64,000 bases of DNA from Octopus sinensis (GCF_006345805.1 NC_043019.1:3410001-3474000); one strand, 5' to 3'. Counted from the first letter of the stretch, positions 19,959 through 62,844 are shown. The notes: a model not told the origin generated them from the sequence alone. Program-made: numbers and translations.

Positions 19959-20182
19959 TCAGCAGTTCAACCAAGCATTGATAATGCTCTCCCTCTTTAA
20001 GGGTCCATAAGAAGGCGTTGCCATCCGGCTGTCTTTGCGGGTATCCTTTCGTGGAGGACGTTTCCCCTCAGAATCAAGAGGCGTGATAATGTTCCTTTCG
20101 GTGTTATCCGCGTGCTGACGACGGAGTGACTGAGCTGGCGCCTCGACAGACGAGCTCTCATCACCGCTCTGGTCGCTACCTA
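19959..20182 (-). CDS. Cadherin terminal coding exon e22
   Basis: atttctgttccag|TA GGT AGC...; [75 protein letters not shown]-richer island within AT-rich flanks. Confidence 0.78.
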
Positions 20183-62100: not shown

Positions 62101-62844
62101 CCCCCGCCACCCCCACCCCACCCCCACCACTACCACCACCACCACTACCACCACCACCATCATCATCATCATTATCATCGTCATCATATTCTTCATCATT
62201 TTAACCACCATTACCACCACCACCATCGTCATTAACCATGAAGGAGCTTTTATGCACATCTTGAACTGCTCCGGCAAAATGCTTAGTGGCATTTCGTCTG
62301 TCTTTACATTCTGAGTTCAAATTCCACCAAGGCTGACTTTGCCTTTCATCCTTTTGGAGTTGATAAAATAAGTACCAGTTGCATACTGGGTTCAATGTAA
62401 TCAATTTATTCCCTCTCCCAAAATTTCAGACCTTGTCCCTTTAATAGAAAGGATTGTTTATAGCTTTATGCGGGTGGTTTGAGACCTACTATCCCACCCC
62501 AAAATTGTTTCATGTTCTCTCAAAAGTTTATAAAATTATTATGATGTCTACGACTATCACAACACATTCTTCTCTTTCTGCTTCGTCCCCTGCTCTCTCA
62601 TTCCTTACTTTTCGTTTACTTTTGTCACCCTTTTGCTTTCTTCCCTGTTTTTAGACTCTCCTCCGGACCCCTCTCTCTCAAATACATGTACTTACCTCTT
62701 GTAATGACGATATACTGCTCAGTTTGTTTTGTTTAAATCTAATGTCTAAAATGCTGTCAGAATACATGCCACAAGTATCAGAAACTCGGAGTTTCAGTTT
62801 AAATAAATCAATATCTGGAATACTGGAATTCAAGTATATCCCAC
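19959..62844 (-). CDS. Multi-exon atypical cadherin (>=15 EC repeats + TM + ~160 aa tail); 22 exons in window, 5' end and signal peptide upstream of window
   Basis: Exons joined manually. All 21 introns are GT..AG and phases match into one open frame of 5459 nt ending in TGA at 19961-19959. Cadherin motifs (xE, DxD, LD[Y/F]E, xDxG, DxNExP/DVNDNAP) recur about every 105 aa. TM helix [20 protein letters not shown] at ~26103-26044 is followed by basic [10 protein letters not shown]. Confidence 0.92.
21088..21280. repeat. Compound (TAC)n(TAA)n microsatellite
   Basis: Directly visible. Confidence 0.95.
22080..22138 (-). CDS. Cadherin cytoplasmic exon e21 (59 nt, phase 2 to 1)
   Basis: tttactatttcag|T TCT GAA...AAC G|gtgaaa; [19 protein letters not shown]. 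It exactly bridges the phase mismatch between e20 and e22. Confidence 0.75.
22767..22874 (-). CDS. Cadherin cytoplasmic exon e20 (108 nt, phase 2 to 2)
   Basis: gcattttatag|A AAG ACA...CCC AA|gtaagt; [35 protein letters not shown]. Not in ORF track. Confidence 0.82.
25949..26775 (-). CDS. Cadherin exon e19 (827 nt, phase 0 to 2): last two EC repeats, TM helix, juxtamembrane segment
   Basis: The frame requires the acceptor ttctgccaagag|GCT GCG ACT (GAG acceptor); donor GCC AG|gtaaat. Contains DVNDNAP, DFD, TDKGIP and the TM helix. Confidence 0.88.
27426..27616 (-). CDS. Cadherin exon e18 (191 nt, phase 1 to 0)
   Basis: cttctccaccag|GT GGT GCT...GGC TCT|gtaagt; [15 protein letters not shown]...NINEAPYF...PEGS. 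Confidence 0.92.
27770..28142 (+). mobile_element. Non-autonomous RTE-derived element, copy 2
   Basis: Ends gaagaagccgactcaacccgcccagggtgaatgtcgccacaagtacaagtaagta, the same 3' end as the RTE at 38683. Confidence 0.75.
28662..29091 (-). CDS. Cadherin exon e17 (430 nt, phase 0 to 1)
   Basis: tctctttccag|CCA GGG ACT...GGA A|gtaagt; [17 protein letters not shown]...FAVNYD...HLNRIP...FHVDTG. Confidence 0.94.
29370..29752. repeat. Compound (AG)n/(GATA)n/(GACA)n microsatellite
   Basis: Directly visible. Dozens of other (AT)n, (AC)n, (ATAC)n and (CAT)n tracts occur throughout the window. Confidence 0.95.
30181..30377 (-). CDS. Cadherin exon e16 (197 nt, phase 1 to 0)
   Basis: ttgttatag|GT GGC TTT...GGA TCG|gtgagt; [17 protein letters not shown]...DVNEAPEF...NEGS. 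Confidence 0.93.
31333..31604 (-). CDS. Cadherin exon e15 (272 nt, phase 2 to 1)
   Basis: tttaattatag|A CTC CAC...ACG A|gtaagt; [14 protein letters not shown]...SINNAP...FYLNQT. e14+e15 = 430 nt, the size of the unsplit homologous exons. Confidence 0.92.
31643..31975 (+). mobile_element. Tc1/mariner left end with transposase N-terminal fragment
   Basis: TA|CAGGGGTTGAACAAGATAATGGAAACAC; from 31832 [38 protein letters not shown] (paired-like HTH), then truncated. Confidence 0.82.
32084..32315. repeat. Fold-back (~115-bp arms, 3-nt loop)
   Basis: agaagaaataaggtactcagaaatctggatg...ttcttca atc tgaagaa...catccagatttctgagtaccttatttcttct. Confidence 0.8.
33550..33920. mobile_element. Inverted Penelope-like terminal repeats (~150-bp arms), each with a minimal hammerhead-like motif
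   Basis: Arms 33550-33703 and 33765-33920; core CTGAAGA...GAAACATATGTC. Confidence 0.75.
35001..35158 (-). CDS. Cadherin exon e14 (158 nt, phase 0 to 2)
   Basis: tatttaacag|GGT GGA ACT...GTC AG|gtaatg; [52 protein letters not shown]. Not in ORF track. Confidence 0.92.
37740..37936 (-). CDS. Cadherin exon e13 (197 nt, phase 1 to 0)
   Basis: catattacag|GT AGA AAG...AGC AAG|gtgagt; [14 protein letters not shown]...DVNEAPHF...VESK. Confidence 0.92.
38683..39357 (-). mobile_element. 5'-truncated RTE-clade LINE (RT C-terminal region plus 3' tail), nested in SINE E
   Basis: Minus-strand translation FVYLGS...[11 protein letters not shown]...QRRLRWF...GGQLKTW...WAAMVRDA...STRPG*; (AAGT)n tail; TSD ccatgt at 38677-38682 and 39358-39363. 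Confidence 0.88.
39597..40023 (-). CDS. Cadherin exon e12 (427 nt, phase 0 to 1)
   Basis: tgtcttttag|GAA AGA ACG...AAA A|gtaagt; [17 protein letters not shown]...FAVNYS...AMNRVP...FTFDDK. Confidence 0.93.
40310..40645 (-). mobile_element. tRNA-headed SINE family E (V-like box ttgagcaagacactt)
   Basis: Minus-strand head gtgaaggtgcatggctcagtggttagagcgtcgagc...gagctcgaatcccgg. Copies at 34560-34885, 38545-38682 plus 39358-39562 (split by an RTE), 54495-54720. Confidence 0.8.
40703..40968 (+). mobile_element. Probable non-LTR 3' end embedded in (TAA)n
   Basis: Unique 265-bp block flanked on both sides by (TAA)n; ends ctctctcactcAATAATAAT. Confidence 0.5.
41131..41321 (-). CDS. Cadherin exon e11 (191 nt, phase 1 to 0)
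   Basis: tttttgtcaag|CT GGA GCA...GCA AAG|gtattt (AAG acceptor); [14 protein letters not shown]...DSNEPPYF...LEAK. Confidence 0.9.
41940..42580. repeat. Purine-rich (GAA/GGA) low-complexity tract directly inside the e10 donor
   Basis: Degenerate gaagaggaggaagaa units. Confidence 0.95.
42593..43022 (-). CDS. Cadherin exon e10 (430 nt, phase 0 to 1)
   Basis: ttttcctcag|AAA GGT TTG...TCC A|gtacgt; [17 protein letters not shown]...SLNKAP...FFFNQS. Confidence 0.93.
43155..43595. mobile_element. Inverted Penelope-like terminal repeats (~195-bp arms)
   Basis: Arms 43155-43350 and 43397-43595; the minus strand reads CTGATGA-stem-GAAATCGGGTC. Confidence 0.7.
44129..44322 (-). CDS. Cadherin exon e9 (194 nt, phase 1 to 0)
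   Basis: gttgttacag|CT GGG GCT...CCA AAG|gtatgt; [20 protein letters not shown]...DVNEAPAF...TEPK. Confidence 0.93.
45895..46040. repeat. (GAA)n microsatellite, ~48 units
   Basis: Directly visible; probably the tail of the composite SINE at 45413. Confidence 0.95.
46101..46533 (-). CDS. Cadherin exon e8 (433 nt, phase 0 to 1)
   Basis: ttttcag|GCT GGA GTT...TCC T|gtaaga; [17 protein letters not shown]...FAVDYD...PLNWKP...FYLNYS. Confidence 0.94.
46598..47035 (-). mobile_element. SINE family A, near full-length copy
   Basis: Same head, core and tail as 846-1270, in reverse orientation. Confidence 0.85.
49236..49426 (-). CDS. Cadherin exon e7 (191 nt, phase 1 to 0)
   Basis: tatttgtag|CT GGA GAA...AAT TCG|gtaaga; [28 protein letters not shown]...DINEPPQF...YENS. 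Confidence 0.93.
50234..50444. mobile_element. Tc1/mariner-like MITE
   Basis: TIRs tagggtgtggcggaagtaacggcctttt / aaaagggcgttacttccgctgcaccctg|TA. Confidence 0.7.
50748..50978 (-). mobile_element. SINE family B (Nin/Deu-like domain gtcgactttgcctttcatcctttcggggtcgataaattaagtaccag) with 11-bp TSD
   Basis: TSD ttaccagtacc at 50737-50747 and 50979-50989; nested in a family-D SINE. Other copies at ~5965-6110, 14818-15205, 20345-20775, 22345-22705, 24333-24745, 29755-29965, 35761-36225, 48090-48300, 51263-51500, 55275-55490, 62270-62400. Confidence 0.85.
51713..51889 (-). CDS. Cadherin exon e6 (177 nt, phase 1 to 1)
   Basis: gtctttag|AC CTG AAC...AAA T|gtaagt; [42 protein letters not shown]... 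Confidence 0.92.
52343..52465 (-). CDS. Cadherin exon e5 (123 nt, phase 1 to 1)
   Basis: actttatag|CT GGG...ACA G|gtaaga; [40 protein letters not shown]. Not in ORF track. Confidence 0.87.
54314..54451 (-). CDS. Cadherin exon e4 (138 nt, phase 1 to 1)
   Basis: cttttccag|CA TCA...ACA T|gtaagt; [45 protein letters not shown]. Confidence 0.88.
56787..57181 (-). mobile_element. Full-length tRNA-headed SINE family C with 13-bp TSD
   Basis: Head GGAGGCGCAATGGCCCAGTGGTTAGGGCAGCGG...GGTTTCGATTCCC; tail ggagtgcttccattcca; TSD ggatatttaacca at 56774-56786 and 57182-57194. Related copies at 36912-37280, 1766-2135, 9646-10020, 45413-46040, 52160-52295. Confidence 0.9.
57480..58170 (-). mobile_element. 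SINE family D with internal ~60-bp tandem repeats and (GAT)n tail
   Basis: Repeated tttacgtgccaccggcac units and 3' block gagtggttggcgttaggaagggcatccagctgtagaaactctgccagatc...gttaaacgatgatgat. Copies at ~24250-25080(+), 47325-47790(-), 48320-48960(-), 50650-51185(+), 55865-56175(-). Confidence 0.8.
60137..60298 (-). CDS. Cadherin exon e3 (162 nt, phase 1 to 1)
   Basis: tatttcag|AC ACA TAT...CCT G|gtaagt; [53 protein letters not shown]. Not in ORF track. Confidence 0.87.
61571..61751 (-). CDS. Cadherin exon e2 (181 nt, phase 0 to 1)
   Basis: attttgcag|CAC TTC CAG...ATA A|gtgagt; [30 protein letters not shown]...FPFI. A second in-frame acceptor lies 9 nt downstream. Confidence 0.8.
61790..62270. 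repeat. Two-unit tandem duplication with (CAC)n/(CAA)n expansion
   Basis: catcgtcattaaccatga(t/a)ggagcttttatgcac(t/a)tcttgaactgct occurs at ~61880 and ~62223. Confidence 0.8.
62696..62844 (-). CDS. Cadherin exon e1 (149 nt, phase 1 to 0)
   Basis: ttttatattttag|GT GGG ATA...CAA GAG|gtaagt; encodes [49 protein letters not shown] (second half of an EC-like repeat). Not in ORF track. Confidence 0.8.

What the first reader, a model, noticed from the sequence alone, without database searches (positions are those of the whole stretch)
19959..62844. Large atypical cadherin with a lineage-specific-looking architecture, a third of its exons invisible to the ORF scan
Seen: 22 phase-compatible exons encode >=15 EC repeats, one TM and a 160-aa tail. 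Known: classical cadherins carry a beta-catenin-binding tail; Fat, Dachsous and CELSR have EGF/LamG domains or many more repeats; cephalopod expanded protocadherins have 6-7 ECs mostly on large exons. None of these fits. The N-terminal repeats (e1-e5) are short and Cys-containing ([22 protein letters not shown]). Inference: a member of a poorly characterised mollusc or lophotrochozoan cadherin family that pipelines would label only Fat-like or CDH23-like.
Basis: partly seen in the sequence, partly recalled or inferred. Interest (0 to 1): 0.7.

Follow-up and report, generated by a model that had tools for sequence, protein, structure and literature searches.

The report
Octopus 16-repeat atypical cadherin gene
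This is a real 22-exon stretch of an octopus cadherin gene, already predicted in the Octopus sinensis genome as "cadherin-23-like", that in fact belongs to an unnamed mollusc/annelid cadherin family carrying an undescribed N-terminal domain.

Summary
On the minus strand, 22 GT-AG, phase-compatible exons (62844 to 19959) translate to 1818 residues. These equal the C-terminal 1818 residues of the Octopus sinensis RefSeq protein "cadherin-23-like" (1908 aa). The window matches that assembly with 0 mismatches. The protein has 16 full-length cadherin repeats (15.5 in the window), one transmembrane helix and a 162-aa tail with no Pfam match. Seven of the 22 exons lack an ORF of 60 aa or more.

It is not CDH23, Dachsous, Fat, CELSR, a classical cadherin or a protocadherin. 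Its relatives are bivalve and cephalopod proteins that pipelines name inconsistently (Fat4-like, Fat3-like, CDH23-like, stan, CELSR-like).

Three things are new here:
- The RefSeq model is 5'-truncated. Three exons upstream of the window encode a ~170-aa beta-sandwich domain with no Pfam model, which sits directly before EC1 throughout the family.
- EC5-EC14 are five copies of a two-repeat, two-exon cassette in which canonical and calcium-motif-poor linkers alternate.
- The "short" N-terminal repeats are normal-length ECs split into small exons, with cysteines conserved across the family.

Function is inferred, not shown: probably an adhesion receptor that does not use strand swapping. Interest is moderate.

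The parts
62696..62844 (-). exon e1 (149 nt, phase 1 to 0): second half of EC1, with the conserved Cys (SDTCGMY)
   Evidence: AG/GT borders; exact match to P0001 aa 91-139
61571..61751 (-). exon e2 (181 nt): first part of EC2 (KISCSL)
   Evidence: Cys conserved in 6 of 6 family members
60137..60298 (-). exon e3 (162 nt): rest of EC2 (ITCFDG) and start of EC3
54314..54451 (-). exon e4 (138 nt): EC3 first half ([10 protein letters not shown])
   Evidence: the CxxxxCP motif is shared by the long-form relatives
52343..52465 (-). exon e5 (123 nt): EC3 second half
51713..51889 (-). exon e6 (177 nt): EC4 first half
49236..49426 (-). exon e7, A-type (191 nt, phase 1 to 0): EC4 second half, DINE linker, start of EC5
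46101..46533 (-). exon e8, B-type (433 nt, phase 0 to 1): rest of EC5, non-canonical linker (PLNW), first half of EC6
44129..44322 (-). exon e9, A-type (194 nt)
42593..43022 (-). exon e10, B-type (430 nt)
41131..41321 (-). exon e11, A-type (191 nt)
39597..40023 (-). exon e12, B-type (427 nt)
37740..37936 (-). exon e13, A-type (197 nt)
35001..35158 (-). exon e14 (158 nt): first piece of a B-type exon split by an extra phase-2 intron
   Evidence: 158 + 272 = 430 nt, the B-type length
31333..31604 (-). exon e15 (272 nt): second piece of the split B-type exon
30181..30377 (-). exon e16, A-type (197 nt)
28662..29091 (-). exon e17, B-type (430 nt)
27426..27616 (-). exon e18, A-type (191 nt)
25949..26775 (-). 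exon e19 (827 nt): EC15, canonical DVNDN linker, EC16, juxtamembrane stretch, TM helix and start of the tail
26044..26106 (-). transmembrane helix [21 protein letters not shown] (inside e19)
   Evidence: hydropathy maximum; translation checked
22767..22874 (-). exon e20 (108 nt): cytoplasmic tail
   Evidence: found by tblastn with P0001 and by an exact-match search over splice sites
22080..22138 (-). exon e21 (59 nt): tail, encodes the FEFWNN motif
   Evidence: motif shared with scallop and oyster members
19959..20182 (-). exon e22 (224 nt including the TGA stop): end of the tail, ...[11 protein letters not shown]
   Evidence: C-terminal motif conserved in Argonauta and in P0002

Best explanation
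The window holds exons 3-24 (at least) of a protein-coding gene of Octopus sinensis. The gene encodes a single-pass type I membrane protein of the cadherin superfamily.

**Architecture, shown from sequence**
- A ~170-aa N-terminal beta-sandwich domain, encoded upstream of the window, runs straight into EC1.
- 16 extracellular cadherin repeats follow.
- EC1-EC4 are family-conserved and carry conserved cysteines.
- EC5-EC14 are five tandem copies of a two-repeat cassette. Each cassette is encoded by one A exon (~194 nt) and one B exon (~430 nt).
- Linkers with D-x-N-E alternate with linkers that keep only the Asn of the DxNDN calcium motif.
- EC15-EC16 are canonical.
- One TM helix is followed by a 162-aa tail without known domains. 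The tail carries a family motif [FY][ED]FW[NT].

**Family, shown**
It belongs to an unnamed cadherin family found in bivalves, cephalopods and at least one annelid. It is not an orthologue of CDH23, Dachsous, Fat or CELSR.

**Mechanism, inferred**
- It acts as a calcium-dependent cell-surface adhesion or recognition receptor.
- Its binding end is the N-terminal domain together with EC1-EC4. It cannot use classical strand swapping, because the EC1 A-strand is not a free N-terminus.
- Its long stalk is rigid at every second linker and hinged or pre-bent at the others.
- The tail recruits unknown partners rather than catenins.
For: **Gene model**
- 22 GT-AG exons with no stop codon, identical to the RefSeq protein.
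- It is colinear with an uninterrupted 2054-aa ORF on a 6359-nt RNA-seq contig of another cephalopod. Only two small indels fall in the ectodomain, and 17 of 18 ectodomain junctions are gap-free.
- No other EC-like ORF exists in the window.

**Cadherin identity**
- PF00028, E = 1e-91.
- Generic hits to solved cadherin structures.
- The AF2 model of the N-domain plus EC1-3 has pLDDT 85 and matches cadherin ectodomains at E = 1e-16.

**N-terminal domain**
- Its exons lie in the genome upstream of the RefSeq start codon.
- No Pfam match.
- 695 representative proteins match the domain profile at E <= 1e-3.
- 72 of 164 inspected proteins have the domain together with ECs; in the cadherin members it runs straight into EC1.
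- AF2 pLDDT 92; the best PDB folds reach only TM 0.4-0.53.

**Cassette**
- EC identities are 26-39% within a class and 12-25% between classes.
- Exon lengths and phases repeat.
- The linker census is, and the same alternation can be read in P0002 and in oyster P0011.

**Family placement**
- EC-level tree.
- Conserved cysteines.
- Tail motif.
- Taxa and database names.
Against: - No expression or splice-junction reads from O. sinensis were examined.
- The signal-peptide exon was not found in the 5.1 kb upstream of the first N-domain exon.
- No functional datum exists for any family member that I could find.
- Loss of calcium binding at the odd-to-even linkers is read from motifs only.
- Interdomain geometry in the AF2 model is uncertain (pTM 0.50).
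- The EC tree was read by nearest patristic neighbours. Branch supports were not assessed.
- Drosophila Cad74A/87A/88C/89D/99C were not compared directly. They are merely absent from the best 120 hits.
Confidence: 0.8

Rival explanations
1. It is a divergent orthologue of cadherin-23, as the RefSeq name says. In that case it would act as a tip-link or inter-stereocilium-type filament that pairs with a protocadherin-15 orthologue.
For: - The RefSeq name.
- CDH23 proteins are among the many 22-25% identity hits.
- It is a long cadherin with some non-canonical linkers and a non-catenin tail.
Against: - It has 16 ECs, not 27.
- An N-terminal non-cadherin domain precedes EC1.
- Dachsous, Fat4 and even bacterial cadherin-like proteins score as well as or better than CDH23.
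- In the EC tree, CDH23 ECs from a hemichordate and a bird are not the nearest neighbours. The only one that appears is Glandiceps EC3, as third or fourth neighbour.
- The tail has no Pfam match of any kind.
Confidence: 0.04
2. It is a shortened Fat/Dachsous-type planar-polarity cadherin.
For: - Dachsous/PCDH16 and Fat4 proteins give the highest summed scores outside molluscs.
- Database names of relatives include Fat 2/3/4-like.
Against: - No EGF or LamG domains, and no Cadherin_C-like tail.
- 16 ECs.
- Mytilus Fat4-like and Tubulanus Dachsous-like ECs are not the nearest neighbours for 15 of 16 octopus ECs. EC1 is the exception, and there the distances are barely resolved.
- The high summed scores follow from the hits being about 3000 aa long, at only 22-26% identity.
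Confidence: 0.04
3. The family works mainly as a shed or secreted extracellular-matrix or biomineral-associated protein, with the N-terminal beta-sandwich as a carbohydrate or matrix binder, rather than as a cell-cell adhesion receptor.
For: - The N-terminal domain also occurs in secreted multidomain proteins with astacin, ApeC, CUB, kringle, sushi and C-type lectin domains.
- Its weak fold matches are to lectin-like and fibre domains.
- Cadherins labelled 'protocadherin Fat 4' are reported in chiton and brachiopod biomineral proteomes (PMC13564323).
Against: - The octopus, squid-like, scallop and oyster members keep a TM helix and a conserved cytoplasmic motif.
- Whether the proteome cadherins belong to this family was not tested.
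- Octopus has almost no shell.
Confidence: 0.1
4. The locus is a decaying or non-functional gene copy, and the model is an annotation artefact.
For: - The RefSeq model lacks a signal peptide and starts at an internal Met.
- The locus is repeat-rich: 49% of the window is self-similar.
Against: - 5.5 kb of coding sequence over 22 exons has no stop or frameshift.
- It shows 49.5% identity and colinearity with a transcribed orthologue and 65% identity with Argonauta.
- The missing N-terminus is present and intact upstream.
Confidence: 0.02

Closest known systems
Bivalve 'protocadherin Fat 4-like / cadherin-23-like' proteins of ~900 aa (e.g. Crassostrea virginica XP_022309583.1) and longer forms (Saccostrea cucullata cadherin-23-like X2, 1514 aa; Solemya velum KAL5014827.1, 3565 aa)
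   Same: - The same N-terminal beta-sandwich domain runs directly into EC1.
- EC2, EC3, EC4 and the last EC are each other's nearest neighbours.
- Conserved cysteines in EC1, EC2 and EC3.
- Single TM helix.
- [FY][ED]FW tail motif in several members.
   Different: - EC number varies: 5-6 in the bivalve expansion, 12 in Saccostrea, about 31 in Solemya and 16 in octopus.
- The cephalopod C-terminal ...ILNAWLN(C) motif is not seen in bivalves.
- None of these proteins is functionally characterised, as far as my searches show.
Cadherin-23 (CDH23), the name given by RefSeq
   Same: - A long chain of EC repeats, one TM helix, and a tail that does not bind catenins.
- Some linkers depart from the DxNDN consensus.
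   Different: - From established knowledge, CDH23 has 27 ECs, a membrane-adjacent MAD28 domain, a free EC1 N-terminus with an extra calcium site, and a PDZ-binding tail.
- Here there are 16 ECs, an N-terminal non-cadherin domain and an unrelated tail.
Fat and Dachsous giant cadherins
   Same: - Many ECs.
- Bends attributed to calcium-free linkers are known for these proteins (established knowledge; not re-checked here).
- They give the highest summed alignment scores outside molluscs.
   Different: - They have 34 and 27 ECs.
- Fat has EGF and LamG domains, and Dachsous has a catenin-binding-like tail. None of these is present here.
- They do not group with this protein in the EC tree.
Protocadherin-15 / CDHR2-type cadherins with calcium-free or partial-calcium linkers
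   Same: Individual linkers lack DxNDN acidic residues, which in PCDH15 gives flexible or bent joints (established knowledge).
   Different: Here the departure is strictly periodic, at every second linker from EC5 to EC14. It is part of a duplicated two-EC cassette conserved between cephalopods and bivalves.
Cadherins with N-terminal non-cadherin modules (hedgling, coherin, lefftyrin of sponges, cnidarians and choanoflagellates; recalled from Nichols et al. 2012, not re-read)
   Same: The principle is the same: a non-cadherin module is fused to the distal end of an EC array.
   Different: The modules differ (Hedgehog-N/VWA, cohesin, LamG/EGF/FN3). The domain here matches no Pfam model.

Membership tests
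Cadherin superfamily | Tandem extracellular cadherin (EC) repeats of about 110 aa | tested here: met
   PF00028 E = 1e-91 with 13 stretches. 16 repeats of 99-107 aa by linker segmentation. The AF2 model of EC1-3 matches cadherin ectodomains at E = 1e-16.
Cadherin superfamily | Calcium-binding motifs (xEx, DxD, DRE, DxNDN) at the inter-repeat linkers | tested here: inconclusive
   Motifs are present at EC4-5, 6-7, 8-9, 10-11, 12-13, 14-15 and 15-16. Only the Asn is retained at EC5-6, 7-8, 9-10, 11-12 and 13-14. EC1-2 and EC2-3 are degenerate. Calcium binding itself was not measured.
Classical cadherins (types I-IV) | Cytoplasmic catenin-binding domain (Pfam Cadherin_C, PF01049) | tested here: not met
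   The 161-aa tail has no Pfam match at E <= 10 apart from noise.
Fat / Fat-like cadherins | About 34 ECs followed by EGF and laminin-G domains | tested here: not met
   16 ECs. No EGF or Laminin_G hit on the whole protein.
Dachsous | 27 ECs, a tail with catenin-binding-like regions, and orthology to Ds/DCHS1 | tested here: not met
   16 ECs. No PF01049 hit. Dachsous ECs from Tubulanus and Haemaphysalis are not nearest neighbours in the EC tree.
Cadherin-23 | 27 ECs, free EC1 N-terminus, PDZ-binding C-terminus, one-to-one orthology | tested here: not met
   16 ECs. EC1 is preceded by a 170-aa domain. The C-terminus is ...AWLNC. Identity is 22-25%, no better than to Dachsous or Fat. See also the EC tree.
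CELSR / Flamingo | Seven-pass adhesion-GPCR membrane domain with EGF, LamG, HormR and GAIN domains | tested here: not met
   Only one strongly hydrophobic TM-like segment was found. None of these domains was found.
Clustered, delta and cephalopod-expanded protocadherins | 6-7 ECs, ectodomain mostly on one large exon | tested here: not met
   16 ECs spread over 19 ectodomain exons in the window.
Unnamed N-domain cadherin family (bivalves, cephalopods, Capitella) | A ~170-aa beta-sandwich domain (CCG...W...QVWR...GD.IGW signature) directly N-terminal to EC1 | tested here: met
   Exons at L001 5125-5361, 7340-7418 and 9925-10091 lie upstream of the RefSeq ATG. This is outside the window. In the transcript-derived orthologue P0002 the domain is joined to EC1.
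Unnamed N-domain cadherin family (bivalves, cephalopods, Capitella) | Conserved cysteines in EC1 (D.CG), EC2 (two) and EC3 (CxxxxCP) | tested here: met
   Alignment of EC1-EC4 from six members. The columns are invariant in A4.
Unnamed N-domain cadherin family (bivalves, cephalopods, Capitella) | Repeat-for-repeat relatedness of EC2-EC4 and the last EC, with alternating odd and even EC classes in between | tested here: met
   Nearest neighbours in the EC tree. Identity matrix. Branch supports were not evaluated.
Unnamed N-domain cadherin family (bivalves, cephalopods, Capitella) | Cytoplasmic [FY][ED]FW[NT] motif | tested here: inconclusive
   Present in Octopus, Argonauta, P0002, Argopecten P0193 and Saccostrea P0158. 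Weaker or absent in others.

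The most novel reading that the evidence does not exclude
The gene may be the cephalopod representative of a so far undescribed spiralian cadherin family. The family's defining module would be a new extracellular beta-sandwich domain with no Pfam model and no close solved fold. That module would replace the strand-swap interface as the binding end. The stalk length would be tuned between lineages (6, 12, 16 and about 31 ECs) by amplifying a two-EC cassette with alternating calcium-rigid and calcium-poor joints. 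If so, this would be a distinct adhesion or recognition mechanism, possibly glycan- or matrix-directed. It would have been hidden under six or more wrong database names.
Probability: 0.4. Interest if true: 0.6.

Novelty: new variant of a known kind. Interest (0 to 1): 0.4.

Why it matters
- **Annotation:** dozens of mollusc genes are filed as Fat4-, Fat3-, CDH23-, stan- or CELSR-like although they share none of those families' defining features. The octopus RefSeq model also lacks its N-terminal domain. This will mislead comparative work on planar polarity, hearing-type cadherins and cephalopod neural adhesion genes.
- **Biology:** the family offers a natural series of the same ectodomain plan at very different lengths, built from one cassette with alternating linker chemistry. 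That series is a useful system for asking how calcium-free linkers set the shape and reach of long cadherins.
- **The domain:** the N-terminal domain is widespread (695 representative proteins). It has no Pfam model and no close match among solved structures, and it recurs in lectin- and protease-containing secreted proteins, so naming and solving it would annotate many proteins at once.
- **Limits:** nothing here touches a long-standing open question directly, and no function is shown.

Tried and rejected
- **Homolog search with P0002 residues 30-205:** it found only the query itself, because the tool needs shared 5-mers and similar length. That search was wasted.
- **Profile with a spliced row:** I repeated it with unspliced exon pieces.
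- **Signal-peptide exon:** I scanned L001 1-5124 for Met, a hydrophobic stretch, a Cys and a phase-1 donor. There were no candidates, so it must lie further upstream than the DNA I could fetch.
- **Cysteine pairing:** model coordinates are not exposed to scripts. I could not test whether the lone EC1 Cys pairs with a Cys of the N-terminal domain.
- **Pfam on LINE-like intronic and flanking ORFs:** no hits.
- **Rfam on the window:** no hits.
- **Literature:** I found no paper describing this family or its N-terminal domain. The library is limited to open-access text, so absence is weak evidence.
- **Rejected readings:** CDH23, Fat/Dachsous, pseudogene (see rival explanations).
- **Rejected claim:** that the N-terminal repeats are 'short'.

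Full report
**What is in the window**

The window is AT-rich, repeat-laden animal DNA (GC 0.33-0.43). About half of it is similar to other parts of itself. It matches Octopus sinensis assembly GCA_006345805.1, chromosome record CM016881.1, with 0 mismatches over the 54,042 bases I could compare.

I listed stop-free segments on the minus strand and every AG/GT site around them. From these I assembled 20 exons that read through without a stop. Pfam scored the product as a cadherin: PF00028, E = 1e-91, 13 stretches.

A search of the protein collection returned P0001, 'cadherin-23-like [Octopus sinensis]', 1908 aa. tblastn with P0001 revealed two further small tail exons. An exhaustive search over splice sites then gave one 22-exon model whose translation is letter-for-letter the last 1818 residues of P0001. 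The stop codon is TGA at 19961-19959.

An EC profile run over all six frames of the window found every ectodomain exon and nothing else on either strand. Seven of the 22 exons have no ORF of 60 aa or more.

**Is the splicing real?**

I could not map reads. The best substitute is P0002, a 2054-aa uninterrupted ORF on a 6359-nt contig assembled from run SRR27666065. That is a transcript of another cephalopod; the tool does not give the species. It aligns to the octopus protein at 49.5% identity from end to end. Only two small indels (3 aa and 1 aa) fall in the whole ectodomain, and 17 of 18 ectodomain junctions are gap-free. Argonauta hians has a 65%-identical partial protein. An intact 5.5-kb reading frame spread over 43 kb, conserved in this way, is not a chance product or a dead gene.

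**Anatomy**

Cutting at the linkers gives 16 EC repeats of 99-107 aa. The first half of EC1 lies beyond the window's right edge. Then come a 36-aa juxtamembrane stretch, one TM helix (window 26106-26044) and a 162-aa tail.

They are not: EC1-EC4 are 107, 106, 99 and 102 aa. They are each split over two small exons and score poorly with Pfam. An AlphaFold model of the N-terminal domain plus EC1-3 of the orthologue has mean pLDDT 85, and Foldseek matches it to solved cadherin ectodomains at E = 1e-16.

- one in EC1 (D.CG) in six of six family members;
- two in EC2 in six of six;
- CxxxxCP in EC3 in the long forms.

They are probably structural disulfides. I could not measure distances because model coordinates are not exposed.

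**A two-repeat cassette**

From e7 to e18 the exons alternate between an A type (191-197 nt, phase 1 to 0) and a B type (427-433 nt, phase 0 to 1). One B exon is split by an extra phase-2 intron (e14 + e15 = 430 nt).

The repeats alternate as well. Odd ECs (5-15) are 26-39% identical to each other, and even ECs (4-14) are 27-39% identical to each other. Odd and even ECs are only 12-25% identical.

The linker chemistry follows the same beat:
- Even-to-odd linkers read D[VIS]NE.
- The EC15-16 linker is the canonical DVNDN.
- Odd-to-even linkers read PLNW, SLNK, AMNR, SINN and HLNR, so only the Asn of the DxNDN motif is kept.

The same alternation can be read in P0002 and in the oyster protein P0011. 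It therefore predates the cephalopod-bivalve split. Whether these linkers bind fewer calcium ions is an inference from motifs, drawn by analogy with PCDH15 and Fat/Dachsous (established knowledge).

**What the annotation misses**

P0002 and the oyster protein P0011 begin with about 170 residues that are not cadherin-like (signature CCG.I..W...G.V..QVWR...GD.IGW). P0001 starts at an internal Met near the end of that region.

I fetched the locus with 10 kb of upstream DNA (L001). It contains three more exons with proper splice sites and matching phases, at L001 5125-5361, 7340-7418 and 9925-10091. These encode the rest of the domain, so the RefSeq model is 5'-truncated. All of this lies outside the window (window y = 80052 - L001 x). 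The signal-peptide exon was not in the remaining 5.1 kb.

**The N-terminal domain**

It has no Pfam match, even in a protein with five copies. A profile search of 1.84 billion representative proteins found 695 proteins at E <= 1e-3. AlphaFold gives a confident beta-sandwich (pLDDT 92). Foldseek finds no solved structure at E <= 1e-3. The best matches, at TM 0.4-0.53, are the lectin-like domain of Cwp84 and phage fibre or decoration domains.

Of the 164 sequences I inspected, 72 have this domain together with EC repeats; in the cadherin members it runs straight into EC1. The named ones are:
- bivalves, with many 5-6-EC paralogues;
- Saccostrea, with 12 ECs;
- Solemya, with about 31 ECs;
- cephalopods;
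- the annelid Capitella, with four copies of the domain and three ECs.

The domain also occurs without cadherin repeats:
- in gastropod astacin-ApeC-CUB-kringle-sushi-lectin proteins;
- in tandem arrays in a hemichordate;
- in a 'polycystin-1-like' protein.

**Which cadherin family?**

Outside molluscs every hit is 22-26% identical. The hits are a mixture of Dachsous/PCDH16, PCDH23, CDH23, Fat4 and even bacterial cadherin-like proteins. Solved structures give the same generic picture.

I built a tree of 225 single ECs from twelve proteins. All 16 octopus ECs pair with the same-numbered EC of P0002. Once cephalopods are set aside, 15 of 16 nearest neighbours are ECs of bivalve N-domain cadherins. 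The correspondence is positional for EC2, EC3, EC4 and the last EC. No nearest neighbour comes from the Tubulanus or Haemaphysalis Dachsous proteins, the Glandiceps or bird CDH23 proteins, or Branchiostoma Fat4. The one exception is EC1, which falls next to a Mytilus Fat4-like EC by a small margin. I read this tree by patristic distance and did not assess support values.

The tail has no Pfam domain. It shares a [FY][ED]FW[NT] motif with scallop and oyster members, and ends in a cephalopod-specific ...ILNAWLN(C).

The family is thus defined by the N-terminal domain, a conserved EC1-EC4 head with cysteines, a variable number of cassettes and a conserved last EC. Database names for its members include cadherin-23-like, protocadherin Fat 2/3/4-like, FAT4, stan, CELSR1/2-like, fmi-1-like and even 'serine-rich adhesin for platelets-like'.

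**How it probably works**

Shown:
- a type I membrane protein with a distal non-cadherin domain;
- 16 ECs;
- periodic linker chemistry;
- a non-catenin tail.

Inferred:
- It is a calcium-dependent surface receptor for adhesion or recognition.
- EC1 does not have a free N-terminal strand, so the classical strand-swap mechanism is not available. The binding end is therefore likely to be the N-terminal domain with EC1-EC4, the part conserved across all family members whatever their length.
- The cassette region is a spacer whose length differs between lineages. Its alternating linkers would make it jointed rather than a continuous rod.
- The partner (homophilic, another protein, or glycan or matrix) is unknown.
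- The domain's company in lectin- and protease-containing secreted proteins suggests a heterophilic ligand. So do reports of 'Fat4' cadherins in chiton and brachiopod biomineral proteomes (PMC13564323). These are leads, not tests.

**Verdict**

The gene is already in the databases as a prediction, so the locus itself is ordinary. The added value is threefold: the family assignment, the truncated annotation, and the undescribed N-terminal domain and cassette design. My literature searches found no description of the family, but they cover open-access text only.

Noticed in passing
L001 5125-5361, 7340-7418, 9925-10091 (equivalent to window positions 74927-69961, beyond the window's right edge): The RefSeq model XP 'cadherin-23-like' starts at an internal Met. 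Three intact upstream exons encode most of a ~170-aa N-terminal domain. The signal-peptide exon is still missing.
   Followed up: yes
L001 5124-5357: The first N-domain exon of O. sinensis carries an Asn-rich insertion of about 20 aa (QNNNNNNSSNYTDVMDNNNSKGQQRN) that P0002 and the oyster protein lack. It may be a loop expansion derived from a microsatellite.
   Followed up: no
window 35001-35158 and 31333-31604: One B-type cassette exon is split by an extra 3.4-kb phase-2 intron (158 + 272 = 430 nt). The other four B exons are undivided. This points to an intron gain after the cassette duplications.
   Followed up: partly
proteins P0121, P0125, P0133, P0175: The same N-terminal domain occurs without cadherin repeats. 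Contexts are five tandem copies in a hemichordate protein, gastropod-type astacin-ApeC-CUB-kringle-sushi-C-lectin proteins, and a 'polycystin-1-like' protein of Ptychodera. No Pfam model covers it.
   Followed up: partly
window 845-1265, 4072-4475, 20367-20778, 24331-24738, 49729-50119, 53041-53457, 53706-54107, 61136-61533 and others: An interspersed element of about 400 bp is present at a dozen or more places on both strands. Together with abundant microsatellites (TA/CA, poly-codon runs), it makes 49% of the window self-similar.
   Followed up: partly
window 38714-39166 (-), 13060-13362 (-), 8926-9270 (+): These are ORFs of 100-150 aa that look like retroelement remnants. One sits in the intron between e12 and e13, in the same orientation as the gene. 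None has a Pfam match.
   Followed up: partly
window 1-19958 and 62845-64000: I recognised no other gene: only repeat-derived ORFs, and no Rfam family at gathering score anywhere in the window.
   Followed up: partly
window 43970-44128: Immediately after the e9 donor the reading frame continues into a His-rich run from a CAT/CAC microsatellite. This makes the ORF look 60 aa longer than the exon, an example of how ORF length misleads in this genome.
   Followed up: no
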